In this document: positions 29,280-49,922 of the stretch, piece by piece | Position numbering within the stretch: position 1 is the stretch's first letter | Layout of the letters: every line of letters begins with the position of its first letter | Virus record (IMG/VR): IMGVR_UViG_3300023181_000025 | Coordinates: 147,169-211,168 of that record | Length of the DNA: 64,000 nt | Direction: 5' to 3' (one strand) | Position numbers and translations under genes: made by a program | Notes under the pieces: model-generated | The model's input: only the letters and a program-made list of their open reading frames with translations | Database searches by the model: none | Told to the model about the DNA's origin: nothing

Positions 29280-29765
29280 ATGGTTACTCCTTCCACGCAC
29301 TACGTTAAGTTCACTGGTAAATTCCGCGACCTTAAGGGTCAAGGATACCGATTCTGGAAGGCTTTTGGGCGTAATTACAGAGTTTATAGCAAAACTTTAA
29401 ACGCTCGTAATCTCACTATATGGCAACATCATGGAGGCTATTTTGAGGTTGCTGATTTGTATGAGCTTTCTGTGATGCTTGTTGAGTTGATTCGGGGAGG
29501 GTTCCAAGGGGTTACGCCAAACATCGGCATATTTTCAGGGCAACAGCGTTATACTATGGTGTTTGATCGACAAGAAAACAAATTTGTTGATGCTATTGGT
29601 CCGAATACAGCAAGGTATGCATTAAAAAATAACGATGACGCTGGGTTTGATGCGTGGTATGAGCGTTATCGGGAATATTGCCTCTGTAAGGATACGATTG
29701 AGGAAATCCAGCACCTACTATCTTCGGGGCAAATCGAGATAGCTCTTGACAATCGGAAGAAATAA
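29280..29765 (+). CDS. Hypothetical protein
   Basis: Tiling. Confidence 0.7.
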   Translation: MVTPSTHYVKFTGKFRDLKGQGYRFWKAFGRNYRVYSKTLNARNLTIWQHHGGYFEVADLYELSVMLVELIRGGFQGVTPNIGIFSGQQRYTMVFDRQENKFVDAIGPNTARYALKNNDDAGFDAWYERYREYCLCKDTIEEIQHLLSSGQIEIALDNRKK

Positions 29766-30289
29766 TCCATAGTTGATCCATGAAGGAATTTAATCTCGCC
29801 CAACTTAGATATGCTGAGGAAGTATGTTTTAAGGACGATTTCATTAAGCTATTCAACAAATACGCTTTGAATTCGTTAGAAGAGAACTTGGGACTATATC
29901 ACTGGTATTATATTTGCAGCGATTATCAAGGCAAAGTATTGAATTGGATTTTCCACTGGTCCCGCGCTGACATGAAAAATGCGATGGGTGGGATCATCGA
30001 AGGAATGCTCACCGATCTAATTGGAGATTACAAAGGATAAAATGAAAAGTTTAATCTTAGGGTTTATTTTGGGGTTCATGATGGTTTTTGGCGTGTGGTG
30101 GCTCAAAACTCCGAATCCCCCATTGGTTTGCTTTCTTCTGGCGGTAGCCTCTATCATTTACCCTCTCAAGGTAAAGATAGATGAGTTAAGCACCAAAATT
30201 TATGAATTCGACAAAGATTGCGGCGGAATTCTTGTAGATTTCCTGAAATGTGTTGAGGGTAAAAAGGATGTTGACAATCGGAAGAAATA
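29746..30289 (+). repeat. 19-bp direct repeat TTGACAATCGGAAGAAATA (29746-29764 and 30271-30289) flanking a two-gene cassette
   Basis: Exact match; both copies are promoter -35/spacer and encode C-terminal DNRK. Confidence 0.9.
29780..30040 (+). CDS. Hypothetical protein
   Basis: Leaderless after promoter at 29746. Confidence 0.65.
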   Translation: MKEFNLAQLRYAEEVCFKDDFIKLFNKYALNSLEENLGLYHWYYICSDYQGKVLNWIFHWSRADMKNAMGGIIEGMLTDLIGDYKG

Positions 30290-30290
30290 G
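30042..30290 (+). CDS. Membrane protein, duplicated at 49638
   Basis: Two TM segments; near-identical DNA copy. Confidence 0.75.
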   Translation: MKSLILGFILGFMMVFGVWWLKTPNPPLVCFLLAVASIIYPLKVKIDELSTKIYEFDKDCGGILVDFLKCVEGKKDVDNRKK

Positions 30291-30304
30291 TTCATTCTAC
30301 TCAC

Positions 30305-30532
30305 ATGGACCGCGAAGCATTAGAAGCTGAATTGAATAGTCTTTACGAACAAATTGGTTCGGTGGGGGCGATTAGCGAAATTCCTGAATCTGTGTTCGAG
30401 CGAGTATGGGAAATCGAAAGGATTCTTACCCCGTCTTCGTTGGAATTGGAAGAGGATTATCGTTGCGGCTGCGAATCTGTGTGGTGCATGGAGTGTGCCT
30501 GCGAACGTGGTGGATGCCCCGAAGATATTTAA
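30305..30532 (+). CDS. Hypothetical protein with Cys-rich C-terminus
   Basis: CGC...C..C.C. Confidence 0.65.
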   Translation: MDREALEAELNSLYEQIGSVGAISEIPESVFERVWEIERILTPSSLELEEDYRCGCESVWCMECACERGGCPEDI

Positions 30533-30533
30533 T

Positions 30534-30824
30534 ATGAAAGGCTTAAAAGTTACTACTATTCCAGAACAACGGGTAGAAACTTTCAATGATGGAGAATCAT
30601 TGGGGTTTTTAAATCAGTTTGAAATAAATCGTCTTCGTATTGAAGTAAAGGATTTCTATAAGGGAAAACCCTCTACCGCTGACACTGGCCTTGAATTGCT
30701 GTTTGACGGTCAGACGATCAGAATTGACTCTAACGGTAATTTGGAATCTTGGCCGCGTGGTCTATTTGATATGTTGGATAACCAATTGATGGTTTTGATT
30801 GATTGGCCCCAAGAAAATAGTTGA
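30534..30824 (+). CDS. Hypothetical protein
   Basis: I.ID.NG.L..WP.G.FD tail. Confidence 0.7.
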   Translation: MKGLKVTTIPEQRVETFNDGESLGFLNQFEINRLRIEVKDFYKGKPSTADTGLELLFDGQTIRIDSNGNLESWPRGLFDMLDNQLMVLIDWPQENS

Positions 30825-30854
30825 CAAATAAGTCCTCTCAAGTAGAGTAACTAC

Positions 30855-31184
30855 ATGAAGCGATACGAAGTCAACCTTTGTAATTCTGAAACCTTTCAAG
30901 GTATGATCGAAGCTCCCGATGGCGATTGGGTTGCTTATGACGAGCTTGGTGTGGTCTCGATGGACAAAGATAAGTTTTATAAAATTGCTAAGTCAATGGA
31001 GCCAGAAAAGAATTGTCGCTTATCTGGTGATGGAAAGCCTTTGTCAAAAGACAAACAAAGATGGCTGAATATTATGGTGGGGGAGATTCGCGCATTGCGC
31101 GAACTTTACGGCCAAGAAAACCCTTTAATAAAAGAAATCTGCACAAATCTACTCGTCGAGGCCATTCTTCTTGACGGCGAGTAA
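30855..31184 (+). CDS. Hypothetical protein
   Basis: MKRY...M...PDGDWV.Y. Confidence 0.7.
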   Translation: MKRYEVNLCNSETFQGMIEAPDGDWVAYDELGVVSMDKDKFYKIAKSMEPEKNCRLSGDGKPLSKDKQRWLNIMVGEIRALRELYGQENPLIKEICTNLLVEAILLDGE

Positions 31185-31205
31185 AATTCAATTAATTTAC
31201 CCCAC

Positions 31206-31451
31206 ATGACCGAGAATCAGGTTAATGTAATTCGATTTGCCGCATTATCTTTGGAACTAACGCTTTGCGATTCATTGAAAAATGATTTCGAAGAGGATCG
31301 CATACAAAAAGAAAATGTTTTGCAGGGTTTATTTTGTAACGCTGATTTGTTAGGTTTAGATTCTGGTGAAATTATTAAAGAATTCGAACGCCAAATGAGC
31401 GTTGTTTCGTGGCTTAGACCATCAATGATGGAGAGCCCTTGGGGTTTTTAA
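31206..31451 (+). CDS. Hypothetical protein
   Basis: Leaderless after promoter at 31171. Confidence 0.6.
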   Translation: MTENQVNVIRFAALSLELTLCDSLKNDFEEDRIQKENVLQGLFCNADLLGLDSGEIIKEFERQMSVVSWLRPSMMESPWGF

Positions 31452-31506
31452 AGCTTTTTTGCAGAAAAAAGTTGACAAATTAATTTACAACGAATAGATT
31501 ATCCCC

Positions 31507-31809
31507 ATGACCACAGTTACCAGACAACAAATCATTGATTTCGTCCGCGCCCAACCCAATGATCGTCCCGTTAATATGGATGAAAACTCAAACAATGAAA
31601 CAGGTTGCGGCTGCGTGATGATTCATTACGGCAGGGAGATTTTGAAACTATCTCAGAATGATTTTGAGGGTTGCGGCTGCACCGTTTGGGAGGGGTTTAA
31701 TGGAGATATTCTTGCCAAAATTGAAAACAGAGAAAGGATCGAAAAGATCCTTTCGGTCAAGCTTTATTTCCGGGGAACGTATGGAGATATTAAAACAAAG
31801 CTTTCATAA
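31507..31809 (+). CDS. Paralog family B member
   Basis: TRQQIIDFV.AQP; CGCVMIHYGRE. Confidence 0.85.
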   Translation: MTTVTRQQIIDFVRAQPNDRPVNMDENSNNETGCGCVMIHYGREILKLSQNDFEGCGCTVWEGFNGDILAKIENRERIEKILSVKLYFRGTYGDIKTKLS

Positions 31810-31838
31810 TATATTACCTTACCTAAAATCTCCTAAAC

Positions 31839-32051
31839 ATGGATATTTACTGCTGTTTTAAACCCACTAAAAGGAATGAGAAGTGTCCACAAGATGTAAA
31901 TCCCGCTTCGCGGCGAATCCTTTATTTTGTGCGCGAAGACCCCGCTGGGGGTTTCACATTGGAGCGGGTTAAAACTGGCGCAATTGAACATGTTGACGAT
32001 ATTTCCCACTTGAAGAAAATGCCCAAAGACTTTATTTTACCCCTCAAATAA
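31839..32051 (+). CDS. Hypothetical protein
   Basis: Tiling. Confidence 0.55.
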   Translation: MDIYCCFKPTKRNEKCPQDVNPASRRILYFVREDPAGGFTLERVKTGAIEHVDDISHLKKMPKDFILPLK

Positions 32052-32066
32052 GATATATTAGTTAAT

Positions 32067-32273
32067 ATGAATAAACCATTTCTACTTATTGCGGGGCGTA
32101 ATTATTACCCCTGTGGCGGCACAGAAGATTGGATTGACCGTTTTGAAACAGAAGAACAGGCCAAAGAAGCCGTTATAATCGACAAATCAAGTAGCTGGGG
32201 CTACACCATTAATGGAAATTATTATGATTGGTTTTCAATAGTAAATCTTGACACTTGGCAAAAAGACAGTTAA
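32067..32273 (+). CDS. Hypothetical phage protein
   Basis: FLLIAG.NYYP.GG..DW...F. Confidence 0.75.
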   Translation: MNKPFLLIAGRNYYPCGGTEDWIDRFETEEQAKEAVIIDKSSSWGYTINGNYYDWFSIVNLDTWQKDS

Positions 32274-32283
32274 ACATACCCCT

Positions 32284-32781
32284 ATGAAACTTATTGATAA
32301 AAAGACATTCAAATCTCTTACCGCCGCCCAAAAGCGCGTGGAAATTGCGAAAGACGTTCTGCTTCGAATTAAGAAGAAAATGGTGTCACCTACGGTGGGC
32401 CAGTTTTTTACTAATCTTGATGATGTTATAGGAGGCTTAGATTGGAAAGACTCAGTCCAAGAAGCCATCAATAATTCACAATGCGAGGTATGCGCCAAAG
32501 GGGCGCTGGTTTGTTCTTGGGTTGGAAACTTTAACAGGGTTAAGAAGAAAGATGTTGTAGGTTTCGATATAGATCTTAGATACGAAGATAGCTTTCCAAA
32601 ATCTTTGGTGAAACTATTCGGACGCGATATGCTTGATTGTATTGAAAACAATTTTGAGGGAATGGATTATGGCTGGGCCTCAAAAGAGGCAAGTAAACGA
32701 GGTATCCACCCTAAATATTGCGGGAATCTCGCGGCCATTATGAAAAACATTATTAAAAATAATGGCACATTCATTCCTTAA
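32284..32781 (+). CDS. Paralog family C member
   Basis: QKRVEIAKDVL; CEVCAKGALVCSW. Confidence 0.85.
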   Translation: MKLIDKKTFKSLTAAQKRVEIAKDVLLRIKKKMVSPTVGQFFTNLDDVIGGLDWKDSVQEAINNSQCEVCAKGALVCSWVGNFNRVKKKDVVGFDIDLRYEDSFPKSLVKLFGRDMLDCIENNFEGMDYGWASKEASKRGIHPKYCGNLAAIMKNIIKNNGTFIP

Positions 32782-32799
32782 CAATTTTAAATATTCGAT

Positions 32800-33096
32800 A
32801 TGAAAACCATTTCAACAAAAGAAATTCTAGATTTTGTCCGCGCCCAACCAGATGATAAAATGGTTAATATGACTGAATCGCTTAATTCAGACCCATGCGG
32901 CTGCGTTATGGTGCAGTATGGCCGGGAAAACAATATTGATTTTGATTGTTGTTTGGCTCGTAGCTTTTATAGAAACAAATCATTTGAAAACCCAATAGCT
33001 TTTCTTGAGGATAGTATTTTCTATATTCTTGGTATAGCCGGAAATTGGATTGGAACTTATGGAGAATTGAAAAAGAAACTACTTGACAAAGTATAG
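32800..33096 (+). CDS. Paralog family B member
   Basis: ILDFVRAQPD; CGCVMVQYGRE. Confidence 0.85.
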   Translation: MKTISTKEILDFVRAQPDDKMVNMTESLNSDPCGCVMVQYGRENNIDFDCCLARSFYRNKSFENPIAFLEDSIFYILGIAGNWIGTYGELKKKLLDKV

Positions 33097-33243
33097 GGAC
33101 AGGAACTGAAACAAAGCAGGTATCAAGCCCTGTCATCGTTATTTTTTATTATTTCTCATTGACATTAATTCTCAATACCCATATTTTATACCCAATGAAA
33201 CGCCGCGCTTCTTACTGTAATTTTACTAAAAATGATTAACCAT

Positions 33244-34047
33244 ATGAATGAATCAGATATTGCCCGCAAATCGTGTCCTGAAGGTTTCCATTATTTTGGG
33301 AATGGGCCAATTATTAATCCGGGAAGCGATTCGAATCGCGATGTGAGAGGTTATTTTAAAGAAAAATGGTGGGATCATAACTGTAATGGTTTAGGCTCTT
33401 CTATTCTTTATGCAATTCGCAAGGGGTCGAAACTTGCGCACATTAATGGATTAGAAAAGTCTTTTGAAGATATCGCGCGAGAAAGCTTGGACGGCAACTA
33501 TTGGTTTATTAAAGGGCCAATTAAAAGAGAAAGGGGCTTCAATGAAGGCGTGGCCATGTTTCTGCTGGGATCAAAAGAATGGGATTATGGTTCCAACATG
33601 GGCAGTGAGGAATATTTTTATGGAATTAAAAAGGGCTCCAGTCTAGCTATTCTTAATAAACTTGAGGGCCTCTATCCTCAATTGCCTAAGAATGCCGAGT
33701 ATATTGGCATGGGGTCGCCAGATAGAGAAAACGAGCGATGCGAGTATGTTTTTGGAGAGGGCGCGGGAACCAAGGAATGGCTTCATTATGGAAATTATTA
33801 CTTTGACGGATGGAAACCCTTGAGCCCAAACCTTCATTACGCCCGTATTGTTAAAAACCCGCATCTTAATTTTATTGAAGCCTTTAAAGAGCTTCAAAAG
33901 GGAAAAGAACTAATGGGGCCGAGCGGCGTAGTAATTTGGATGGAAAACGGATGTATTTGGGTTAAAATGGATCATCCGCATGAACCTCTCCAGTATAACT
34001 TTCGCGAAATAGATTATTTTTTTGAAAAGTGGAAAGTAATTGATTAA
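33244..34047 (+). CDS. Three-repeat protein with C-terminal Tad2/DUF2829-like domain
   Basis: Repeats DIAR.S...GPI...W...G.....Y.I.KGS.LA..N.LE; tail NFIEAF..L.KGK...D.....W.VI. Confidence 0.6.
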   Translation: MNESDIARKSCPEGFHYFGNGPIINPGSDSNRDVRGYFKEKWWDHNCNGLGSSILYAIRKGSKLAHINGLEKSFEDIARESLDGNYWFIKGPIKRERGFNEGVAMFLLGSKEWDYGSNMGSEEYFYGIKKGSSLAILNKLEGLYPQLPKNAEYIGMGSPDRENERCEYVFGEGAGTKEWLHYGNYYFDGWKPLSPNLHYARIVKNPHLNFIEAFKELQKGKELMGPSGVVIWMENGCIWVKMDHPHEPLQYNFREIDYFFEKWKVID

Positions 34048-34048
34048 T

Positions 34049-34366
34049 ATGAGCAATAAACTATATTCATATGGAAACCGCGATTTCCCTATATGCGAAA
34101 GAAGCCGTGTTGTTTGTGCCGCCAATCGCCGAAAAGATGGCTTGATAATTTGCGGCGCTCGCCATTGGGATAGCGTCATGAGAGGGCAGAAGAATGCAAT
34201 TGGAGGCGCGCCCGAAGATTGGTATGATATAGAAGATGGGTTCATTGACCAATTCAATAACTTCTTGACACGGGAGGAAGCTTGGGTTATTGCTCTTAAA
34301 CAAAGGCAAATTATTCGCGACGAGGATAAAACGCCCGGCACCCTCTATTCTGAAAACCTTTATTAG
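34049..34366 (+). CDS. Conserved hypothetical phage protein
   Basis: VCAA...G.RH...GFIDQ...FLTREEA...LYSE.LY. Confidence 0.8.
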   Translation: MSNKLYSYGNRDFPICERSRVVCAANRRKDGLIICGARHWDSVMRGQKNAIGGAPEDWYDIEDGFIDQFNNFLTREEAWVIALKQRQIIRDEDKTPGTLYSENLY

Positions 34367-34384
34367 AAATATCCAAATTAATAC

Positions 34385-34942
34385 ATGAACTCAATCTTAA
34401 ATTTTTATTATTTTCATCCGGTTTGGGGCTTTATTGTTCCAATAGCTTTTTTTATTATTTTAACTGCATTCTTCCACAGGATTGACAGGTTTGACGAATC
34501 GGGACTAGTTTCACTTTGTGGGCTGGGCGCGCTCCTAAGTTTTATTGGTTCTATTCTTCTTATTTTTGGAAGTTATTCAAAAATTAATGACCGATGGGAA
34601 GAAGAAACCCCTTTGAAAATTATTTCAATTACTTCTAAAGAAGGGTGGAACATACAAGGGGCAGGAGGCGGAAGTGTTTTAGGTTTTGCCGGACAAGTTC
34701 AAGGTGGATCGGCTTCAAAATATTCATTTTATTGTGAAGAAAAGGGCTTTATTGTCAAAAAGGTTGTTGACTTTGACAAGGTAAGGTTCCAGTATGGCCC
34801 CGAACCAAAAGTTACCCCTTGTTATCGTCTTAACAGTGACCGGGGCGGGACGACTTATTATGTAGATAAAAATTCAGAATTTATCTATACAATCACTGTC
34901 CCCGAGGGTTCGTTTGAAAAATATATCACTATTTCACAATAA
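34385..34942 (+). CDS. Membrane protein
   Basis: Two N-terminal TM helices; ITVPEGS. Confidence 0.75.
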   Translation: MNSILNFYYFHPVWGFIVPIAFFIILTAFFHRIDRFDESGLVSLCGLGALLSFIGSILLIFGSYSKINDRWEEETPLKIISITSKEGWNIQGAGGGSVLGFAGQVQGGSASKYSFYCEEKGFIVKKVVDFDKVRFQYGPEPKVTPCYRLNSDRGGTTYYVDKNSEFIYTITVPEGSFEKYITISQ

Positions 34943-34946
34943 AAAT

Positions 34947-35327
34947 ATGAATTATAAAATTAAGAAAGGAAGCGAAATCTCTCTTCGGGCTTTGCTTGGG
35001 GCCCTTGTTGGGCTTGGGTATAAATTTTCCGATTATTTCGAAGATGTAGAAAGATATTTACGTAAATCCACTTATCCGTATGTCCTTATCACAGAAAGCG
35101 GTATTATTGATGCGTGCCGGGAGAATTATACTGAAGCGGAGATCATTTTATGGCCGGAAGGCTTTGAGGAGATTATTTCGGTAGCTCTTATAAAATCAAT
35201 TTATATCGAAAATGTGGGGAAATATAAAGCAAAAATTACCGCTAAAGGCATTAAAGTGGGCTGCACTTCGATTTCATTTGAAAAGTTTAATGAGATTGCC
35301 GAAGCGGTCAAAAGTTTCCAACAATAA
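34947..35327 (+). CDS. Paralog family D member
   Basis: WPE...I.NVG.Y.A.I....IKVGC..ISFEKF.EI. Confidence 0.8.
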   Translation: MNYKIKKGSEISLRALLGALVGLGYKFSDYFEDVERYLRKSTYPYVLITESGIIDACRENYTEAEIILWPEGFEEIISVALIKSIYIENVGKYKAKITAKGIKVGCTSISFEKFNEIAEAVKSFQQ

Positions 35328-35364
35328 TCTTTGACAGACCGGATGAGACCCGGTAAGTTATAAG

Positions 35365-35590
35365 CAGTCGCCCATGCTGATTTTCTTTTTAGTTTTATTC
35401 AGCTAGAATTATTAAGAAAAGGGGCGGAATTGAATAAAAAATAGAGGTAAATCGAAACTATATAAGCTATTTGGTTCGAGTCCAAAAGGGTTGGCGTTCT
35501 TTCTATTAGGAAGACGCTATATAGAAGTAGGAAAAAGATAAAACGTGTAGCTAGCGGGGGTGGGAGATTTTCTCCTGCCCCTCTTTTTTT
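35365..35590 (+). ncRNA. Candidate standalone structured RNA (about 225 nt) with pseudoknot and T-loop
   Basis: Promoter TTGACA-N17-TAAGTT at 35330; long 5' stem; TTTGG-TTCGAGT-CCAAA; ends in terminator. Confidence 0.65.
35556..35590 (+). terminator. Rho-independent terminator
   Basis: GGGGGTGGGAGA-TTT-TCTCCTGCCCCT plus T tract. Confidence 0.85.
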
Positions 35591-40899: not shown

Positions 40900-40981
40900 G
40901 GTCCGTTGCCCAAATTGGTAAAGGGAACATCTTTAAACGGTGTCGCGTAACAGCTTCTCGGTTCGAGTCCGAGGCGGACTA
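40900..40981 (+). tRNA. tRNA-Leu(TAA)
   Basis: GGTCCGT/GCGGACT acceptor, ACATC-TTTAAAC-GGTGT, long variable arm, CTCGG-TTCGAGT-CCGAG; CCA not encoded. Confidence 0.92.
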
Positions 40982-41596
40982 CTTATTTTTACCTTTGTTT
41001 TTGCCGCAATAAGTTTCCGTAAGGGAATGGCAATTAGGACAAAGAAATCGAAGGTTTGACAGTTCATTGTTGGAGTTGTCCCCATCTATATGGTCCAAGT
41101 GAAGAGAGAGTTTAATTCCTCGCCATTCTGTAAGGAAACACTCATCACATATATAAGGAATAAGACCGTATTTAAGAATTTTTCGTTTTAGATTTGTGCT
41201 ATGGAGAGTTCCATCTTTAACAAAAGATTCCTCTATAGATTTTTCTGGTGCATATATATTTGTCTTATTTTTTAAATGCCCCTGACCAGTAAAATGGGAG
41301 GTGTCCAAGCACAGTGATTTTATTCTATTATAAAAAATTCTATAATTGCCTCCCCTAGGAACAATGTCACATTTCTTTAAAACCTCGGCGACTGAAAAAC
41401 TTTCAGCAACATATTGAGAAAATAATTCATTATCAACTTTTGCCGTTGAATGTTTGGATTTAATTTTATCCTTGCTGGTCTTTCCTTTGCACCAGTCCAT
41501 AACAGTTGAGCGATTTACCCCTGTTTGTCTGGATATTTCACAGTAATTTAAACCCTTTTCCCTTAATTTTAATACATTTTCAAATAATTCATTCAT
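40979..41596 (-). CDS. HTH + HNH endonuclease
   Basis: GLNY.EISR.TGVNRSTV..W; C..C...W....L.LHLDHIDG...NN...NLR.LCPNCHS.T. Confidence 0.92.
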   Translation of the reverse strand: MNELFENVLKLREKGLNYCEISRQTGVNRSTVMDWCKGKTSKDKIKSKHSTAKVDNELFSQYVAESFSVAEVLKKCDIVPRGGNYRIFYNRIKSLCLDTSHFTGQGHLKNKTNIYAPEKSIEESFVKDGTLHSTNLKRKILKYGLIPYICDECFLTEWRGIKLSLHLDHIDGDNSNNELSNLRFLCPNCHSLTETYCGKNKGKNK

Positions 41597-41725
41597 GATG
41601 AAATTAATTACACTCACCATGGTGAAATGTGAACTAGGGCAATTTCTCTGTTGACATTCACCCCATCTTAACCCATTCTATCCAAAGATGAGCTAGGAAC
41701 AAAAGCCTTTAAATATCAAATCAAC

Positions 41726-42562: not shown

Positions 42563-42931
42563 ATGACTAAGCAAGCAATTATCGAAGAAACTGCCGCATT
42601 TTACAATAGCGGTAATCGCGGGCAAACCTCTATTGGCTATATTTATGTAAATAAATATGGTAACAAATGTGGGGTAGGTCGCTGTATGACAGATGACGGC
42701 ATCGCAGTGTTTGGGGGATTTGGGGATGATGTTATTGAACTTGAAAAAAAGGTTAAGGATTCCTATAGCGGCCTTGATGATATTTTGAAAGAGGAATATC
42801 GCGGCCATTCGGTTGATTTCTGGGCGGACATCCAAGGGTTTCATGACAATAGCGAGAATTGGGATAAAGAAGGAATTTCGTTTCGGGGTTTAGCATCTAA
42901 AGCATTCCTTCTTGAAAAATATTCCAGTTGA
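42563..42931 (+). CDS. Paralog family A member
   Basis: CGVGRCMT; FWADIQGFHD. Confidence 0.85.
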   Translation: MTKQAIIEETAAFYNSGNRGQTSIGYIYVNKYGNKCGVGRCMTDDGIAVFGGFGDDVIELEKKVKDSYSGLDDILKEEYRGHSVDFWADIQGFHDNSENWDKEGISFRGLASKAFLLEKYSS

Positions 42932-43762: not shown

Positions 43763-43763
43763 T

Positions 43764-44003
43764 ATGATTTATTTGATTCTGTATGCTATCGCGGGGATCG
43801 TGGTTTTCTTTATTAATATCATTTATAATATGAAAAAGAATACATATAAAGGGCTTCACGATTTCTATATTATTGCTGGTATAGTATGGCCGATAACAAT
43901 TTTCGCGGTTCTCTTCGATTTTCTTCGTCCATTTTTGGAAAACTTGTGGATTAAAATTGAAACCATTCTTTACAAAATATCTGGGAAAACCAAAAACTCA
44001 TGA
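43764..44003 (+). CDS. Membrane protein, tandem paralog
   Basis: Y...G...WP...LW.KIE..LYK.SGK. Confidence 0.7.
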   Translation: MIYLILYAIAGIVVFFINIIYNMKKNTYKGLHDFYIIAGIVWPITIFAVLFDFLRPFLENLWIKIETILYKISGKTKNS

Positions 44004-44239
44004 CTCTTTATATTATTTTAGCTTATATTTTAATTGGATTTTTAATGTTTTGCGCATTGATTGTCTATGACATGCGATCAGGCGAATATTTTGGATTTAG
44101 TGGAGTCTATCTTCTTGGGTGGGTTCTTTGGCCCATCTTTGCTATTTCTTATATACTTTTCGAAATCCTCCCATTTCTTTGGGAAAAGTTTGAAAATCTT
44201 TTATATAAGTTTTCTGGAAAACAACGGGGGGAGACTTAA
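44000..44239 (+). CDS. Membrane protein, tandem paralog
   Basis: Y...G...WP...LWEKFE..LYK.SGK. Confidence 0.7.
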   Translation: MTLYIILAYILIGFLMFCALIVYDMRSGEYFGFSGVYLLGWVLWPIFAISYILFEILPFLWEKFENLLYKFSGKQRGET

Positions 44240-44244
44240 TCCTT

Positions 44245-44502
44245 ATGAATGAGCAATTAGAAGCGTTCGCTCGCAAAAAACTTCTAGAAGGTCTGCTAAA
44301 ATGTAGCGATTCCGAACAACTTATTTTTAAGCGAATGTATTCTCATAAAAATCTTGACAACCCTATTTCAAATGTGGTCGCCGAAATGGCGACCGATAAG
44401 CTAAATTGGGCACTTAGTCAAGTTGAAGCTACCCTTAAGAACAAGAGAAAAAGAGAGCGAGAAATTTCTAAAAATGCAATTGACTTTTTGAGAATCCTTT
44501 AG
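44245..44502 (+). CDS. Hypothetical phage protein
   Basis: FKRMYS...KL.WA..QV. Confidence 0.7.
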   Translation: MNEQLEAFARKKLLEGLLKCSDSEQLIFKRMYSHKNLDNPISNVVAEMATDKLNWALSQVEATLKNKRKREREISKNAIDFLRIL

Positions 44503-44609
44503 TAATTTAACTGCATATGAATGACACGTTCTCTATTATCGTTCTTTTAATTCTATTGGTTCTCTTTGGAATCGCCTATATTACCAAATAAAATTAAAAA
44601 TATTTTTAT

Positions 44610-45011
44610 ATGCCCTGCAATTGTGATTATATGGAGCCAAGCGAGAGTGAATTTCAATCCCAGCTTACTTGTCAGCACATTCAATATGTTCTAAAAACTT
44701 TGGACCGCCCTGTTCCACAATGGATCAAGGACGCCGCGAAAAATAGTTACGGGAATCCCAGCCGACTTAACGAGGCCGTAGTGACTCTTTGTGACTTGTG
44801 CCATGAACTTACCACCGAGCAAGAGGGCGCAATCATTTATGACGGGCGCAATCCAAGGGCGCGAGCACTCGCTGATTGGTGGGATCGCCATAAGGCGGCA
44901 GACAAAGCGCGAAAGAAAAAAGAACGGGAAGAGAAAAATAAACTAAAAGCAATTGCCTCGGCGAAAGACAAGCTAACCGCTGACGAGAAAAAGGCTTTGG
45001 GAATTGCGTGA
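44610..45011 (+). CDS. Hypothetical phage protein
   Basis: MPC.CDY...LC...WW..HK..D...KLT..EK.ALG. Confidence 0.75.
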   Translation: MPCNCDYMEPSESEFQSQLTCQHIQYVLKTLDRPVPQWIKDAAKNSYGNPSRLNEAVVTLCDLCHELTTEQEGAIIYDGRNPRARALADWWDRHKAADKARKKKEREEKNKLKAIASAKDKLTADEKKALGIA

Positions 45012-45053
45012 ATTCATATTGACAATTTGCTGCATATTGGATAATTTACACCC

Positions 45054-45632
45054 ATGGAACTGTCCCTTAAAACCTTAAAAGATCGAAAGAAAGTCGCCGA
45101 GCACCTTCGGGAAAGGGCAAAAGATCCGGGTGAGGATAGTTATTATCAATATGGTTTGTTTCTAATTAAAAATACTCCAAATGCACTTGAGAAAGCGGCC
45201 AAGCTAATTACACGTAGCGGGCCATCATTTTATAAAATTAAGCCAAGCGACGGGTCAGCGCAGGCTTTGACATTTTACGGTTCATACCAAAAGAATATTG
45301 AAGCCATTGTTCGGCAATTGGAAATCCAGAGGGAATATATGGAGCCTTCTCAGGTAATTGCATGTGAGAGGCAATTGGTAATTCTTAAAAATCTAAGACA
45401 GGCAGAAACAATTGAGAATCTAAGACGCTCTCTTTCTATAGATCTACGAAATTCTATTTATTATCTTAATGTAGAAACGGAGCGCCTGACGCGCACGCGG
45501 GGCGCAAAGCTTATTGAGGAAAGAAAATCAAAAATTGAAAAATTAAAAAAATCTTTCGAACAGGAACTTGATAAATTCGCGCAAGACGATCAGGAATTGA
45601 TTGAAAACATTTATAAATATCTAATATTGTGA
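45054..45632 (+). CDS. Coiled-coil hypothetical protein
   Basis: Leaderless after promoter at 45019. Confidence 0.65.
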   Translation: MELSLKTLKDRKKVAEHLRERAKDPGEDSYYQYGLFLIKNTPNALEKAAKLITRSGPSFYKIKPSDGSAQALTFYGSYQKNIEAIVRQLEIQREYMEPSQVIACERQLVILKNLRQAETIENLRRSLSIDLRNSIYYLNVETERLTRTRGAKLIEERKSKIEKLKKSFEQELDKFAQDDQELIENIYKYLIL

Positions 45633-46042
45633 AAGTAAAAGTTTCTTTAATTCTGGATATTCCAGATAAATATGCTGATGATGGATTACCTAAAAGCGAT
45701 CCACTCACTCCATCGGGCACGCCTTGGGCCGATGCCTTTATTAGACAGGGAGTATTTGATAATTTTACGAATTACGCTAATTGCCAGCATTTACAAGATG
45801 CTTTAAAATGGGTGTGCGAGCCAAAATCCGTTACTCAACAGTATATTGTGGATACTCATAAAGAGTGGGCTGAAATCCTCAATAAAGGAAATAGAAACTG
45901 TCAAGTGGAAATTCTTAGCGAGAAGGACGGAAAGGAACAAATTGCCGCTAGGTTCGCCGCAATGGGATTCAGCGAGAAAGATCTGGTTACTTTGGGCTAT
46001 GTGGAGGAAAAAGAACTTTACAAAAGCTCAAGGGAATGCTGA
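45629..46042 (+). CDS. Hypothetical protein
   Basis: GTGA overlap. Confidence 0.65.
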   Translation: MKVKVSLILDIPDKYADDGLPKSDPLTPSGTPWADAFIRQGVFDNFTNYANCQHLQDALKWVCEPKSVTQQYIVDTHKEWAEILNKGNRNCQVEILSEKDGKEQIAARFAAMGFSEKDLVTLGYVEEKELYKSSREC

Positions 46043-46117
46043 CAAGGATTTATCCAAATGCAGCCGCCAATTAATAATTCTTGACACCCTTCAAAAAACA
46101 ACCATACTAATCTCACT

Positions 46118-46309
46118 ATGAAACAAGGAACCATTGCAGAACTCGCACAAACATATAAGGTCAATCCAATTCAAATGAATGGCGCGATCCACTTTCTTCT
46201 TGCTGTTGGTAAGGCGGAACTCGTCGGCCCTAAGGAACGCCCGGCAGGAACTAAGGGCAAGCCAAGTATGATTTATAGTGTTGACATTGAACCAAAAACT
46301 GAAGTATAA
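46118..46309 (+). CDS. Small winged-helix-like protein
   Basis: TIAELA...GKP..IY. Confidence 0.6.
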   Translation: MKQGTIAELAQTYKVNPIQMNGAIHFLLAVGKAELVGPKERPAGTKGKPSMIYSVDIEPKTEV

Positions 46310-46348
46310 TAATTTATCCGCAGGCTGTGAGATAAGGTGAGAGGTAAT

Positions 46349-46380
46349 AAGGGCGGCGGAAGAAATTCCCCGCCCTTTTT
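46349..46380 (+). terminator. Rho-independent terminator
   Basis: AAGGGCGG-C-GGAA-GAAA-TTCC-CCGCCCTT plus T tract. Confidence 0.85.
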
Positions 46381-46418
46381 CGTTGACAAACCCCTCATAA
46401 TATTAATAATATCCCCAT

Positions 46419-46841
46419 ATGAATGAACTTATCGAATCTCTTAGGAGGGGAACTGAGCAGGCAATTGCACGCGGCGAAGAAATGAAACGCCAGAAAGAAA
46501 AAGACGACGCCCAAAAAGAGCTTTTCCGTCATGACCTTGCTAAGACATGGGCAGAAGCGAAGGCGCAATGCCTCCCCGAAAAAGCTAAACAAGCGGCCAG
46601 TGAAGGAAAAAATGAGGTTTGCGTTGTAGCTTCTGGGAAATACGGAAAATCTGAATTTGGGGTTGTTGAGGATGATCGCAGTTTTACGGGAGTCCTAAAG
46701 GATTGGAATACAAAAGGATCGGGGTTGAAATATTATTACCTTCATAAACTTTTGATTGAGGCGGATTTTAACGTTAGTGTTAAATATGAGTATGATGGTG
46801 GCGGGCAATGGAGCTGGTATAGCATTTACATTAATTGGTAA
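46419..46841 (+). CDS. Hypothetical protein
   Basis: Promoter at 46383. Confidence 0.7.
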   Translation: MNELIESLRRGTEQAIARGEEMKRQKEKDDAQKELFRHDLAKTWAEAKAQCLPEKAKQAASEGKNEVCVVASGKYGKSEFGVVEDDRSFTGVLKDWNTKGSGLKYYYLHKLLIEADFNVSVKYEYDGGGQWSWYSIYINW

Positions 46842-46856
46842 TTAATTAAAAATAAT

Positions 46857-47102
46857 ATGGCAAAGTTTATTTCACAGTCTGGGCTACGAAACCTCAAAGA
46901 GGGGGCGGTTGTTTCGTTATGCGGAGACAATGGGAAAATACAAATTTTTAGTTGGAGCGGTAGAATTTCTGAATTAGTTTTAGAGGTTTTTGACGCGAAT
47001 ATTCAATTTAGTATGAAGGGCAAAGAAACTGAGATTAGTATTTATGGTTATGTTTCTAGCTCTAACGGCAAATATGAACTAATTGAAATTTATTTAAAAT
47101 AA
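46857..47102 (+). CDS. Hypothetical protein
   Basis: Tiling. Confidence 0.55.
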   Translation: MAKFISQSGLRNLKEGAVVSLCGDNGKIQIFSWSGRISELVLEVFDANIQFSMKGKETEISIYGYVSSSNGKYELIEIYLK

Positions 47103-47112
47103 TATTTTATAT

Positions 47113-47496
47113 ATGAAAACATACGCAGAAATACAGGGCGAGCCACCCTTTAATTGGTTTAATTTTTTGAGCCAAGAAAACATTTCATCCGAGGAATGGC
47201 AAGACGCTAAGATTAAATCAAGTTCATGGGTTACCTGCGCTTGTGGCAACCAATGCAGTATTATCCCTCGCTCAATTTACGGCGCGCCTCTTGATAATGA
47301 GCTAGAGGCATTAGGAGGGGGTCAAGGCTTTCATGGGGCAATCGAATTGAAGCTTAAAGGGGTGGCGCTGGAATACCTTAAACTTATTGAAAAAAGGTCC
47401 GCCTATTTGATCAAAAATATAAACGAAGAGATTGAAAGGGAGATTATGGATCATGAAGAAGAAATTAAAAGGCTCAAAAAACTACTTATTTCTTGA
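47113..47496 (+). CDS. Hypothetical phage protein
   Basis: WVTCACG....IPR...G.P.D..L..LG. Confidence 0.75.
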   Translation: MKTYAEIQGEPPFNWFNFLSQENISSEEWQDAKIKSSSWVTCACGNQCSIIPRSIYGAPLDNELEALGGGQGFHGAIELKLKGVALEYLKLIEKRSAYLIKNINEEIEREIMDHEEEIKRLKKLLIS

Positions 47497-47527
47497 TATT
47501 TGCGAAAAATAAGTGTATAACGAAGGC

Positions 47528-47749
47528 ATGAAGGTCTTCTTATTTATGTCTTTTGTAGCAATTTGGCCTGTTTCTTGTCATGATAAGAACAAAAACCATT
47601 GCCCCGCGCCACCTCAAAAGCAGGTTTGCGAGCCTAAACCGCATTGCTATACTCAAATGCCCCTGATCGCGCCTGAGCCGTCCTTAGCTATGGGAAGCGC
47701 CTTTACATGCACGGTAATGCTAGGGGTTCTACGCAGGCGAAAGCCATAA
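47528..47749 (+). CDS. Miniature PEP-CTERM protein (73 aa)
   Basis: N-terminal signal (PVSC); C-terminal APEPS, hydrophobic helix, RRRK; own promoter TTGATA-N17-TATAAC. Confidence 0.75.
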   Translation: MKVFLFMSFVAIWPVSCHDKNKNHCPAPPQKQVCEPKPHCYTQMPLIAPEPSLAMGSAFTCTVMLGVLRRRKP

Positions 47750-47790
47750 AATTAGGTTGACAAATTTAATAAACGGTCCATTCTTTTCGC

Positions 47791-48090
47791 ATGACTCGTC
47801 ACAAAAAGCTCATTGAGCAAATAACCTCTCTTGAAAGTTCAATTTCTCAAACTCCGGTGAAGGCAAAGAACGCACGGAAATTTGAGTTAGATTCTAATTT
47901 TGCTTTCCAGTGCGGCGAAATGTCAAGGGTTATAGATAAAATGCTTCCTATCGTAAATGAGTATGCTAATTTTGTTGGACATGGGGAAATTTATTTAAAA
48001 TGCGTTAATGCTTTGGAAACTTACCGGGATTTTCAGGAAAACAGATTAGCTTTTGTATCTGGGAAAGATTTCCCCGGAATTGAAGGTTAA
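47791..48090 (+). CDS. Hypothetical protein
   Basis: Leaderless after promoter at 47757. Confidence 0.65.
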   Translation: MTRHKKLIEQITSLESSISQTPVKAKNARKFELDSNFAFQCGEMSRVIDKMLPIVNEYANFVGHGEIYLKCVNALETYRDFQENRLAFVSGKDFPGIEG

Positions 48091-48109
48091 ATATAAACAA
48101 ATTAAAATA

Positions 48110-48340
48110 ATGGACACAATCCCATCGCCTCGGCCTAACGAAACCCTTGATGGTTATTATCTCCGATTGGTGGATACTCTGGAAGCAGAGCGAAGCTCAT
48201 CGCCTACATTTCTTAAACAGCGGATTGCTATAGTTCTTAGTCTAATTGGAAATGTAGATCATTCAATTGGAAATGGCCCCAAGGCTGCCAAAGTGCGCGG
48301 CGAAAAACTAAACGATATTCGTCTTATCCTTAGCGAATAA
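48110..48340 (+). CDS. Hypothetical protein
   Basis: Tiling. Confidence 0.6.
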   Translation: MDTIPSPRPNETLDGYYLRLVDTLEAERSSSPTFLKQRIAIVLSLIGNVDHSIGNGPKAAKVRGEKLNDIRLILSE

Positions 48341-48344
48341 TAAT

Positions 48345-48680
48345 ATGGACATTAAAACCCTTGAAGAATTGATTCAAATTTTGGATCAAAATAAAATTAA
48401 ATATTATGGGGAAACCTCCGAAACGGTCATTTACCCCGCCATGAAAAAAGAATACAAAGGATATATTAGGATTCATTTTAGTCCAGAAAATCCTCTTCCC
48501 GATGTTTGGGAAAGCATTCTTATTTCAAATATTAAAGGAATCGAGGTCTCTGTTTCTGGAACTCGTATTGTGAGCGGAAACGGTGCAATTGATGGTATGC
48601 TATTGCCGGAATATGCCATGCGGCGAGAAAGCCTTAACGAAAAGAGGAAATCGCTTGGATTCCAGCCTATTGGATATTGA
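48345..48680 (+). CDS. Hypothetical protein
   Basis: Tiling. Confidence 0.6.
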   Translation: MDIKTLEELIQILDQNKIKYYGETSETVIYPAMKKEYKGYIRIHFSPENPLPDVWESILISNIKGIEVSVSGTRIVSGNGAIDGMLLPEYAMRRESLNEKRKSLGFQPIGY

Positions 48681-48712
48681 CTTTTCCAGCAAGCCTTTGT
48701 ATTGTCGTTTAT

Positions 48713-49609
48713 ATGGATAAGATTTATAAAATTTGCTCAACAGAGGAATATGATTTGTTGGTGGAGAAGTTTGGGAAAGAGTATTGGAAGACCTCCAAAA
48801 GAGGTTGTCTTTCCGCTCTTGGGATGCATTCAGAAATTGCTATTTTCCCTCGCTCTATTTCTTTGTCGGGGAATTATTCTTCTAATCCTGAAGCGACTAA
48901 AAAACACAAACCTTGCCTAGAAATTGTTTCTTTTGATGAGGCGATGGCGGAAAATTTTAATATAAATACTGGGGATAAGTTTGAAGCTGTGAGGGATGAG
49001 CCTTTTTGTATTAGTCGTCTTAAAAAGGGTGGACCAATTACAGTTACGAAAATTTTGGAAACGGGCGGGTTTCTTGGAAAAATTCCCGGAGACATTTTTG
49101 ATTATATTTTTAGGAACGATCCGCGCCAAATTAAAAAAATCAAATCAAAAACATCCATGACCCTCCGCGAGCAAATCGAATTGGCAAAAAGCTACTTAGG
49201 AAAAACAATTGAATACTCTGAAGGGATATCCAATACAGTTTCGGGGATTGTATTGGGAACAGATACGAATGCTCAAGTTGGGGGCGCTTATACCGACAGA
49301 GCGGAAAAACAAATCGCTAAAAATGGCTTTTTTGTTTCAATTTGGTTGAAAGAAAGTAAAGGATTTATTTTGATTGATGATCAGACCCCTAATTTTAAAA
49401 TTCATGAGCCTATCATGGTGAACGGTTTTGAAGCCAAAGATCGCGGGGATTCTTATGGTTTTGGGTGCGCGAAGATTGGAAAGGAGTCCTTGAAAGCGGC
49501 GAAAACCTTTTTGGAAACAGTCAAATCAGACGGAACTAATAAGCCGGTCGAGTTTGTAGAGATTGGCGCGGGTAAATTTACTTTGGAAATTCTTAATAAG
49601 CTCGTTTGA
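48713..49609 (+). CDS. Multidomain paralog family D member
   Basis: EQIELAKSYLGK; VNGFEA...FGCAKI...V.IG.GKF. Confidence 0.75.
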   Translation: MDKIYKICSTEEYDLLVEKFGKEYWKTSKRGCLSALGMHSEIAIFPRSISLSGNYSSNPEATKKHKPCLEIVSFDEAMAENFNINTGDKFEAVRDEPFCISRLKKGGPITVTKILETGGFLGKIPGDIFDYIFRNDPRQIKKIKSKTSMTLREQIELAKSYLGKTIEYSEGISNTVSGIVLGTDTNAQVGGAYTDRAEKQIAKNGFFVSIWLKESKGFILIDDQTPNFKIHEPIMVNGFEAKDRGDSYGFGCAKIGKESLKAAKTFLETVKSDGTNKPVEFVEIGAGKFTLEILNKLV

Positions 49610-49637
49610 AAAATAATTATTGACAGTCCTTCAATTA

Positions 49638-49875
49638 ATGAAAAGTTTAATCTTAGGATTTATTTTGGGGTTCATGATGGTTTTTGGCGTATGGTGGCTT
49701 GAGACTCCAAATCCCCCATTAGTTTGCTTTCTTTTGGCGGTAGCCTCTATCATTTACCCTCTCAAGGTAAAGATAGATGAGTTAAGCACCAAAATTTATG
49801 AATTCGACAAAGATTGCGGCGGAATTCTTGTAGATTTCCTGAAATGTGTTGAGGGTAAAAAGGATGTTGACAATC
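49638..49875 (+). repeat. 238-bp dispersed repeat (other copy 30042-30279)
   Basis: 8 mismatches by hand count, all in the first ~100 bp; ends in TTGACAATC. Confidence 0.95.
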
Positions 49876-49880
49876 AATAA
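49638..49880 (+). CDS. Membrane protein, duplicate of 30042
   Basis: 238-bp near-identical copy. Confidence 0.75.
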   Translation: MKSLILGFILGFMMVFGVWWLETPNPPLVCFLLAVASIIYPLKVKIDELSTKIYEFDKDCGGILVDFLKCVEGKKDVDNQ

Positions 49881-49922
49881 TTTGCTTGACAAGTTTCAAT
49901 AATCCATTACCTTAATCCCGTT

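What the first reader, a model, noticed from the sequence alone, without database searches (positions are those of the whole stretch)
29746..49922. Cassette shuffling at promoters caught in the act
Seen: a 238-bp gene copy (30042-30279 versus 49638-49875; 8 mismatches, all in the 5' part) starts at the ATG and ends within the next TTGACAATC. Copy 1 lies in a unit flanked by a 19-bp promoter repeat (29746, 30271). Copy 2 follows an orphan TTGACA (49620) only 12 nt before the ATG and is followed by two -35 boxes in tandem, as if it had landed in a promoter. Known precedent: promoter-containing repeats mediate modular shuffling in T4-type phages (PeSL elements). Inference: the promoters serve as micro-homology recombination points in an integrase-free cassette array.
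Basis: partly seen in the sequence, partly recalled or inferred. Interest (0 to 1): 0.6.

Follow-up and report, generated by a model that had tools for sequence, protein, structure and literature searches.

The report
Duplicated phage gene joined at promoters
A small membrane-protein gene sits twice, 19.6 kb apart, in the early region of an uncultured 211-kb leaf-litter phage, with its copies joined to their surroundings inside or beside promoters; this fits known promoter-linked gene shuffling in phages, but the copies are old, so nothing is caught in the act.

Summary
A 239-nt repeat (30041-30279 / 49637-49875, 8 mismatches) is the longest repeat in the 211-kb genome. An exact 19-mer (29746, 30271) brackets a 525-bp two-gene unit. 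An orphan TTGACA lies 12 nt before copy 2.

It is not an assembly artefact. The shared node has about twice the depth of its flanks, and an independent sample holds the copy-1 haplotype with its own flanks.

- **For:** TTGACAATC is a three-way joint. The 19-mer is a clear outlier among 946 promoter pairs. Both the 525-bp unit and copy 2 carry direct repeats in the geometry expected from insertion of a circle.
- **Against:** the copies are a mosaic. All 8 differences are transitions in the first 98 nt, 6 of them synonymous (dS about 0.38), and the last 141 nt are identical. That means an old pair with later gene conversion. Promoters otherwise share only the hexamer. No stem-loops flank these sites. 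The copy-2 joints are out of register with promoter elements. No close relative exists for comparison.

The firmer finding is architectural. At least 32 genes have ATG exactly 28-29 nt after TTGACA, which predicts leaderless mRNAs, and Shine-Dalgarno motifs are not used. This explains why gene units run from an ATG to the next -35 box.

The parts
29280..29765 (+). Gene A (161 aa, ORFan). Its last codons (LDNRKK, then stop TAA) carry the -35 box of the next promoter.
   Evidence: ORF list. No Pfam or PHROG family. The only match in metagenome contigs is the source contig itself.
29746..29764 (+). Left copy of the exact 19-mer TTGACAATCGGAAGAAATA. This is promoter P: -35 at 29746-29751, -10 CATAGT at 29768-29773, ATG of gene B at 29780, 28 nt after the -35.
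29780..30040 (+). Gene B (86 aa, ORFan), predicted leaderless. It is the first gene of the 525-bp unit.
   Evidence: No family. Unrelated to D and E.
30041..30279 (+). Repeat copy 1. It carries gene C1 (30042-30290, 82 aa, two predicted membrane helices, stop TAG).
   Evidence: Depth doubles over the shared part, and an independent X2 contig covers 30028-30355.
30271..30289 (+). Right copy of the 19-mer. This is promoter P': -35 at 30271-30276 inside the last codons of C1 (VDNRKK, then stop), -10 CATTCT at 30293-30298, ATG of gene D at 30305, 28 nt after the -35.
30305..30532 (+). Gene D (75 aa, ORFan), predicted leaderless from P'.
   Evidence: Unrelated to B and F.
48713..49609 (+). Gene E (298 aa, ORFan with paralogues at 14236 and 22929). 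Predicted leaderless from TTGACT at 48677. C2 is the second and last gene of this operon.
   Evidence: No family.
49620..49625 (+). Orphan -35 box with an A/T-rich upstream element (AAAATAATTA). It lies only 12 nt before the C2 ATG, so it cannot serve C2 as a leaderless promoter.
   Evidence: It shares TAATTATTGACA with the promoters at 52829 and 56496.
49632..49639 (+). CAATTAAT, the left member of a 7/8 direct repeat that spans the left joint of copy 2.
   Evidence: 0.3% of random 239-nt segments reach 7/8 in any split.
49637..49875 (+). Repeat copy 2. It carries gene C2 (49638-49880, 80 aa, ends VDNQ then stop TAA).
   Evidence: Its upstream flank is seen as a loose end of an X1 contig.
49867..49878 (+). 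TTGACAATC carried at the end of copy 2, followed by AAT. CAATCAAT (49871-49878) is the right member of the 7/8 repeat. This -35 lies 50 nt before the F ATG.
49886..49922 (+). Promoter of gene F: -35 at 49886-49891, -10 TACCTT at 49908-49913, ATG at 49923, 31 nt after the -35.
49923..50123 (+). Gene F (66 aa, ORFan).

Best explanation
The window is the early, hyperplastic end of an uncultured jumbo phage from leaf litter. The genome is a 211,168-bp circularly closing contig.

Shown: about 50 small ORFan genes lie on one strand in short operons. Each operon starts at a sigma-70-type promoter placed so that transcription should begin at the A of the ATG (TTGACA, 16-17 nt, TAnnnT, 6 nt, ATG). The -35 box of each promoter usually sits in the last codons of the gene before it. 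The natural unit of this genome therefore runs from an ATG to the next -35 box.

Shown: one such unit, gene C, a two-helix membrane protein of about 80 aa, is present twice. Each copy is the last gene of a two-gene operon.

Inferred: the pair is old, because the first third has dS of about 0.38 under purifying selection. A recent non-reciprocal exchange (gene conversion) made the last 141 nt identical up to the edge of homology in TTGACAATC.

Inferred: the joints were made by recombination at very short homologies, 8-19 bp, at the promoter edge. This most likely happened by single-crossover insertion of small circular or permuted intermediates. That would leave the 19-bp direct repeat around the B-C1 unit and the CAATYAAT repeat around C2.

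Promoters take part because they are the only shared and dispensable sequence between genes. They are not a dedicated recombination element.
For: - Genome context: terminase with intein, DnaE, ribonucleotide reductase and tape measure protein. The contig ends overlap.
- Leaderless design: 34 sites of TTGACA-N28/29-ATG on the + strand, 0 on the - strand, and 2.7 in shuffles. Thirty-two open ORFs of 35 aa or more, and in every one the ATG is the first in the ORF. Shine-Dalgarno motifs occur upstream of 37 of 373 genes, below the 13% background.
- Real two-copy state.
- Single-gene unit.
- Mosaic divergence: 8 transitions, 6 synonymous plus K22E. Synonymous differences are 6 of 20 sites against 0 of 28 sites. 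The chance that all 8 fall in the first 98 nt is 7e-4.
- No RNA structure explains the identical part (z = -1.4).
- Gene conversion among other paralogues: a 39-nt exact run within paralogues that are 73% identical over 255 nt (79% over a 107-nt core).
- The 19-mer is an outlier.
- The 7/8 repeat lies in circle-insertion geometry.
- Precedent: recombination in early promoters of T4-type phages produces insertions, deletions and mini-circles (PMC2839356, PMC4122927).
Against: - No close relative and no raw reads were available, so no empty site, deletion or circle was observed.
- The 7/8 repeat was noticed after the fact.
- Neither copy can be derived from the other by one simple circle event. 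Copy 1 alone has no flanking repeat (2/8).
- A 239-bp circle is small.
- Selection for intact genes in a genome with 1-40 nt between genes would place surviving joints in promoters whatever the mechanism.
- The direction of transfer and the donor are unknown. The donor may have been another phage.
Confidence: 0.5

Rival explanations
1. Promoters are incidental. Random illegitimate recombination copied the gene, and only joints that left every gene and promoter intact survived. With 1-40 nt between genes, such joints necessarily lie in or beside promoters. The short flanking repeats are chance, or ordinary microhomology that has nothing to do with promoter function.
For: - Gaps between genes are small and are filled by promoters.
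- Promoters share only the hexamer.
- The locus-2 joints are out of register, and the left joint at locus 1 has no promoter.
- The old single-gene indel Z has no TTGACA at its borders.
- There is no excess of truncated promoters at short TTGACA-to-ATG distances genome-wide.
Against: - The exact 19-mer in direct-repeat geometry is very unlikely by chance.
- Three different left arms meet two right arms at the same 9-mer.
- The 7/8 repeat around copy 2 is reached by 0.3% of random segments.
Confidence: 0.3
2. A true PeSL-type system. Promoter cassettes would be the preferred substrates of the phage recombination machinery, and ORFans would shuttle routinely as mini-circles throughout the array.
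For: - Same setting as PeSLs: a hyperplastic early region, strong sigma-70-like promoters with an A/T-rich upstream part, and ORFans (PMC2839356).
- Two repeat signatures of circle insertion.
- A few promoter-upstream elements are related to each other: 52799-52834 against 56466-56501, and a 16-mer at 46346 and 52805.
- Early genes are scrambled between distant relatives.
Against: - No stem-loop at the four sites.
- No extended homology among promoters.
- No Shine-Dalgarno element.
- Only one recent repeat pair in 211 kb.
- The duplication is old.
- No variants in two samples, although contigs hide rare forms.
Confidence: 0.15
3. Two separate acquisitions. The two copies would be diverged alleles of gene C, brought in independently from related co-infecting phages rather than duplicated within this genome. 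Their 3' parts would have been homogenised later.
For: - Divergence of the 5' third is high (dS about 0.38) while the flanks are wholly unrelated.
- Early regions of relatives are heavily reshuffled.
Against: - No other carrier of gene C was found in 5.8 billion proteins, IMG/VR, GenBank phages or five related contigs.
- This still requires the same joints at the promoter edge.
Confidence: 0.1
4. Assembly artefact or retro-copy. Either the second copy is a misassembly, or it is a cDNA of a leaderless mRNA that starts at the ATG.
For: - The repeat starts 1 nt before the ATG, where leaderless transcripts should start.
- Contigs break at the repeat.
Against: - Depth doubles over the shared part, and each copy has its own flanks in contigs.
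- An independent sample carries the copy-1 haplotype with its flanks.
- The copies differ mostly by synonymous changes.
- Neither copy sits at the leaderless distance from a promoter.
- The repeat ends in a -35 box, not at a terminator.
- No reverse transcriptase was seen among the proteins scanned.
Confidence: 0.03

Closest known systems
PeSL (promoter-early stem-loop) cassettes of T4-type phages (Arbiol et al. 2010, PMC2839356; Comeau et al. 2014, PMC4122927)
   Same: - Hyperplastic early region packed with ORFans.
- Strong sigma-70-like promoters with an A/T-rich upstream part.
- Joints of gene-sized insertions lie within promoter sequence.
- Direct repeats of promoter sequence flank an ORFan unit, as expected from mini-circle insertion or excision.
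- No integrase.
   Different: - No stem-loop or terminator at these promoters.
- No Shine-Dalgarno element, because the mRNAs are predicted leaderless.
- Promoters share only the hexamer, apart from one 19-nt pair, so homology is 8-19 bp rather than tens of bp.
- The -35 boxes lie inside coding sequence.
- The phage is not demonstrably T4-type; it has a DnaE-type polymerase.
- Neither circles nor indels between relatives were observed.
Mosaic joints at gene boundaries in tailed phages, made by illegitimate recombination followed by selection (Hendrix/Hatfull model; from my own knowledge)
   Same: - Homology ends sharply at gene starts and ends.
- Neighbouring genes are unrelated.
- ORFan-rich early regions are scrambled between relatives.
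   Different: Here two joints carry short direct repeats (19/19 and 7/8) in circle-insertion geometry, and three arms meet at one 9-mer. This points to short homology rather than fully random joining.
Gene conversion between dispersed paralogues
   Same: A block of complete identity (141 nt) lies next to a block with dS of about 0.38 in the same gene. A second family shows a 39-nt exact run in a diverged background (73% over 255 nt).
   Different: The tract runs to the very end of homology inside a promoter. Donor and direction are unknown.
Integron gene cassettes
   Same: A one-directional array of small, mostly single-gene units that could pass through circular forms.
   Different: - No integrase.
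- No attC-like imperfect inverted repeats.
- Every operon has its own promoter rather than one common Pc.

Membership tests
PeSL cassette (T4-type phages) | Strong sigma-70-like early promoter (-35 and -10) directly upstream of the ORFan | tested here: met
   TTGACA, 16-17 nt, nAnnnT at 29746, 30271 and 49886. Copies C1 and C2 themselves have no promoter of their own at a working distance.
PeSL cassette (T4-type phages) | Stem-loop (terminator) forming one composite element with the promoter | tested here: not met
   No terminator-like hairpin next to 29746, 30271, 49620 or 49867/49886. The -35 boxes lie in coding sequence. Hairpin plus promoter does occur elsewhere: 35556-35582 with 35592, and 46351-46375 with 46383.
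PeSL cassette (T4-type phages) | Sequence conservation between elements long enough for homologous recombination | tested here: not met
   Among 946 promoter pairs the match beyond TTGACA is 6 nt or less, with the single exception of the 19-mer pair.
PeSL cassette (T4-type phages) | Shine-Dalgarno sequence between the -10 box and the ATG | tested here: not met
   The ATG lies 6 nt after the -10 box. Shine-Dalgarno motifs are not enriched anywhere in the genome.
PeSL cassette (T4-type phages) | Indels between closely related genomes end in the elements | not testable with these tools
   No close relative in GenBank phages, IMG/VR, JGI metagenomes or the protein collection. The nearest phage shares about 50-60% amino-acid identity in core genes.
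PeSL cassette (T4-type phages) | Mini-circles formed by recombination between flanking elements | not testable with these tools
   Both runs are held as contigs only, and these drop rare forms. No joint was seen at 29746/30271.
Integron cassette array | Tyrosine-recombinase integrase and attC recombination sites | tested here: not met
   No recombinase domain in any ORF of 200 aa or more between 27 and 53 kb. The only mobile-type gene is an HNH endonuclease at 40979-41620 on the - strand. No recurring attC-like repeat.
Leaderless sigma-70 transcription units | The -10 hexamer ends 6-7 nt before the start codon, with no 5' UTR and no Shine-Dalgarno motif | tested here: met
   The ATG-aligned profile gives a -10 box at -12 to -7 (A at -11 in 43 of 65, T at -7 in 40 of 65) and a pyrimidine at -1 in 54 of 65 sites (C 29, T 25). 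There are 34 sites on the + strand against 0 on the - strand, and 2.7 in shuffles.
Leaderless sigma-70 transcription units | Mapped transcript 5' end at the A of the ATG | not testable with these tools
   No RNA run holds this phage.

The most novel reading that the evidence does not exclude
In a jumbo-phage lineage unrelated to T4, ORFan genes would move as tiny circles (239-525 bp). These would insert by 8-19 bp of homology at the edge of leaderless promoters, with no stem-loop element and no recombinase of their own. Promoter-guided mini-circle shuffling would then be a general way for large phages to trade early genes. The leaderless design, ATG at +1 with the next -35 inside the previous gene, would be what makes every gene a ready-made cassette.
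Probability: 0.2. Interest if true: 0.6.

Novelty: new variant of a known kind. Interest (0 to 1): 0.4.

Why it matters
How large phages gain, lose and swap the many small early genes of unknown function is known mechanistically only for T4-type phages, through PeSLs. Many of these genes are thought to serve host takeover or counter-defence.

This locus offers a second, unrelated phage in which joints of a gene-sized unit lie at the promoter edge with short direct repeats. The genome is so compact that the promoter and the gene boundary are the same thing. If the joints are confirmed, only 8-19 bp of promoter-edge homology would be enough.

Separately, the leaderless, Shine-Dalgarno-free early programme (at least 32 genes) is a clear and testable prediction about how this phage and its unknown host start translation.

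Tried and rejected
Searches for relatives:
- DNA near-match of 29000-50500 against GenBank phages: none.
- Gene C by tblastn in phages, by peptide scan in IMG/VR, by word search in 5.8 billion proteins, and in five related viral contigs: only itself.
- Gene E in IMG/VR: none.
- Gene A in JGI metagenomes: only the source contig.
- The 19-mer in IMG/VR: one unrelated coding chance match, L070.
- A hypothetical empty-site sequence for locus 2 in IMG/VR: none.

Comparison with the nearest phages:
- G001 and L061-L063 were found through DnaE and the conserved gene at 51540.
- Core genes are syntenic at about 50% amino-acid identity, but the early genes are few and scrambled. This is too distant to map breakpoints.

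Other checks:
- Tandem-duplication origin of the 525-bp unit is rejected. A against C and B against D share nothing except the DNRKK tail.
- Co-duplication of neighbours is rejected.
- A constrained RNA structure as the cause of the identical 141 nt is rejected (z = -1.4).
- A Shine-Dalgarno role for the AAGGA before C1 is rejected as chance.
- An excess of truncated promoters before gene starts was not seen.
- The protein-atlas look-alike search for C gave only weak hits from unnamed archaeal clusters.
- Pfam and PHROG scans of neighbours gave nothing.

Not run:
- The large HMMER search and structure or complex prediction. None of them bears on the joints.
- No alternative genetic code was used.

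Full report
**Context.** The window is the last 64 kb (147169-211168) of a single 211,168-bp contig whose ends overlap, so the assembly closes on itself. The genome encodes a large terminase with an intein, a tape measure protein, DnaE-type DNA polymerase III alpha and ribonucleotide reductase. It is a jumbo tailed phage. The contig is Ga0247815_10000014. The only public runs that hold it are two leaf-litter metagenomes from two different studies.

**Observation.**
- The alignment of the two places shows a 239-nt repeat, 30041-30279 against 49637-49875, with 8 mismatches. Homology is lost completely 1 nt before the ATG and directly after TTGACAATC.
- It is the longest repeat in the genome. The exact 19-mer TTGACAATCGGAAGAAATA at 29746 and 30271 is the longest exact repeat outside coding homology.
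- No further copy of the 19-mer exists with up to 3 mismatches.
- The orphan TTGACA at 49620, 12 nt before the ATG, and the two boxes at 49867 and 49886 are as described.

**Not an artefact.**
- In the source run the contigs stop at the repeat. One contig arrives from the copy-1 side. Another arrives from the copy-2 side, and its unmatched end reads the copy-2 upstream flank.
- The shared piece 30063-30279 has depth 29.2 against 16.4-16.6 for the flanks. A further contig leaves into the copy-1 right flank.
- In the second sample, at a depth of only 2-4, one contig covers 30028-30355 without a single difference. The copy-1 haplotype is therefore tied to the copy-1 flanks in independent data.
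- No joint at the 19-mers was seen, but contigs cannot show rare forms.

**Architecture of the region.**
- TTGACA occurs 85 times in the window against 33.6 expected, 74 times on the + strand.
- Genome-wide, the first ORF-opening ATG after TTGACA lies at 28-31 nt in 37 of 81 cases, against about 0.5 per position elsewhere.
- TTGACA-N28/29-ATG occurs 34 times on the + strand, never on the - strand, and 2.7 times in shuffles. Thirty-two of these sites open ORFs of at least 35 aa, and in all 32 the ATG is the first ATG of the ORF.
- Aligned on the ATG, the sites show a -10 box at -12 to -7, a C-rich stretch, a pyrimidine at -1, and an A/T-rich part upstream of the -35.
- Shine-Dalgarno-like motifs precede 37 of 373 genes, below the 13% background.
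- The early genes are therefore predicted to be transcribed as leaderless mRNAs. This is inferred from sequence; no RNA data exist.
- The stop codon of the preceding gene usually falls in the promoter spacer, so the -35 box lies in that gene's last codons. The modular unit of this genome thus runs from an ATG to the next -35 box, which is exactly the extent of the repeat.
- The nearest relative, IMG/VR contig 3300049919_000418, has DnaE at 59% identity and structural genes at about 50%. It shows the same spacing peak (14 sites at 27-30 nt including the flanks of the peak, 10 of them at 28-29 nt) but shares few early genes.

**The gene and its two settings.**
- C1 (82 aa) and C2 (80 aa) are small proteins with two hydrophobic helices and a charged tail. 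They have no relative anywhere searched.
- Locus 1 reads: gene A, promoter P, gene B (leaderless), C1 starting 1 nt after the stop of B, promoter P' embedded in the end of C1, gene D (leaderless).
- Locus 2 reads: gene E (leaderless), a 28-nt spacer with the orphan -35, C2, then the promoter of F.
- A, B, D, E and F are ORFans and are unrelated to each other. The duplicated unit is one gene.

**Age and mosaic structure.**
- All 8 differences are transitions. Six are synonymous and two make K22E.
- In codons 1-33, 6 of 20 synonymous sites differ, giving dS of about 0.38. In codons 34-79, 0 of 28 differ.
- The chance that all 8 differences fall in the first 98 nt is 7e-4.
- The identical part has no unusual RNA structure.
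- The pair has therefore existed for a long time under purifying selection, and the 3' 141 nt were homogenised recently.
- A 39-nt exact run inside paralogues that are 73% identical over 255 nt (79% over a 107-nt core), at 23789 and 42773, shows the same process elsewhere in the genome.
- 'Caught in the act' does not hold.

**The joints.**
- TTGACAATC is a three-way joint. On its left are the end of A or the end of C (twice). On its right are GGAAGAAATA (twice) or AATAATTTGC.
- A second joint follows the 19-mer, where the -10 regions of B and D begin.
- Among 946 promoter pairs the 13-nt extension beyond TTGACA is unique, so P and P' share descent. As direct repeats around the 525-bp B-C1 unit, they have the geometry of a single-crossover (Campbell-type) insertion.
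- Copy 2 is bracketed by CAATTAAT (49632-49639) and CAATCAAT (49871-49878) in the same geometry. The right end of the insert resembles the left flank, and its left end resembles the right flank. Random 239-nt segments reach 7/8 in 0.3% of trials, but I found this repeat after the fact.
- Against a strict promoter-by-promoter model: the locus-2 joints lie 12 nt after one -35 and 10 nt before another, so they are out of register. The left joint at locus 1 has no promoter. Copy 1 alone has no flanking repeat (2/8). Neither copy can be derived from the other by one circle event.

**Comparison with PeSLs.** PeSLs are composite elements with an A/T-rich part, a sigma-70-like promoter, a stem-loop, a Shine-Dalgarno sequence and the ATG. 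Crossovers between them, mapped between the -10 box and the ATG or the Shine-Dalgarno sequence, delete, insert and circularise ORFans (PMC2839356, PMC4122927).
- Here the promoter feature is met.
- The stem-loop, extended conservation and Shine-Dalgarno sequence are not met.
- Indels between close relatives and mini-circles could not be tested.
- The locus therefore works plausibly like a PeSL exchange, but it is not a PeSL.

**The null model.**
- Gaps between genes are 1-40 nt and are occupied by promoters. Any joint that spares the genes lies in a promoter.
- An old segmental duplication (27293-27796 plus 28253-28531 against 32284-32781 plus 32800-33096) differs by one inserted gene, 27807-28235. 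Its borders are a stop codon and AATATG-type starts, without TTGACA.
- There is no excess of truncated promoters genome-wide.
- These points keep the 'incidental' reading alive at about 0.3.

**Verdict.** The best reading is an old single-gene duplicate in a leaderless-promoter early region, joined by very short homologies at the promoter edge, possibly through circular intermediates, and later partly homogenised by gene conversion. The mechanism is inferred, not shown. The leaderless, Shine-Dalgarno-free early programme is the most solid new feature.

Noticed in passing
whole genome; in the window e.g. 23940, 28777, 29746, 30271, 30821, 31472, 42528, 42928, 45019, 47757, 50112, 52049, 54282, 55743: At least 32 genes have their ATG exactly 28-29 nt after TTGACA, with a -10 box ending 6 nt before the ATG. 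All are on the + strand and none on the - strand. This predicts leaderless mRNAs. Shine-Dalgarno motifs are not enriched anywhere in the genome (37 of 373 genes against a 13% background). The host is unknown.
   Followed up: yes
genome 91899-91973 (L005:11899-11973); C1 stop codon at window 30288-30290: The phage carries at least 18 tRNA genes, including one with anticodon CUA (amber suppressor type). TAG is the rarest stop, at 24 of 373 genes, and C1 ends in TAG while A and C2 end in TAA. No sign of recoding was seen in the large genes, and no other genetic code was applied.
   Followed up: partly
window 23789-23827 and 42773-42811: A 39-nt exact match lies inside paralogues that are otherwise 73% identical over 255 nt (79% over a 107-nt core). 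They belong to a family of at least 5 small Cys-containing proteins (phrog_31716), partly in tandem with a period of about 400 bp. This suggests gene conversion between dispersed paralogues.
   Followed up: partly
window 30583-30620 and 31422-31459: A 38-nt repeat (84% identical) is read in different frames. One copy lies inside the 5' part of gene 30534-30824. The other lies at the 3' end of gene 31206-31451, where it forms a weak terminator-like hairpin before the promoter at 31472. It may be a relic of an older joint.
   Followed up: no
window 27293-28531 versus 32284-33096: An old two-gene segmental duplication (about 68% nucleotide identity) differs by one inserted ORFan, 27807-28235. One copy of the first gene has its own leaderless promoter (32248) and the other has none.
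   Followed up: partly
window 46346-46388, 52799-52834, 56466-56501: A small family of promoter-upstream elements, AAGGG(G)CGGC..AATTAATTATTGACA. At 46351-46375 the GC-rich part forms a terminator hairpin just before the promoter, which is PeSL-like. At 52805 only the left arm remains.
   Followed up: partly
window 1036, 35790, 43350, 52307 and genome 88927, 126742: A recurring motif AAATATTAATATGAA lies at gene starts that lack a TTGACA promoter. Its role is not examined; it could be a second promoter class or a translation start context.
   Followed up: no
window 40979-41620 (- strand): A free-standing HNH endonuclease with an N-terminal helix-turn-helix domain (phrog_10822, E = 8e-45) lies on the opposite strand within the early array. 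It is not adjacent to either copy.
   Followed up: partly
genome 13560-16298 (L001): The large terminase subunit carries an intein splicing domain (Pfam PF14890, E = 2e-11).
   Followed up: no
genome 92835-93820 versus G001 96415-97400: A 987-bp stretch is 85% identical in DNA (95-98% in protein) to the nearest relative, whose other genes are about 50% identical in protein. It is either an unusually conserved gene or a recent exchange between the two lineages.
   Followed up: no
window 10001-12000 and 62001-64000: GC content rises to 0.50 and 0.47 against about 0.38 elsewhere. The 397-aa ORF at 10009-11202 has no Pfam or PHROG family.
   Followed up: no
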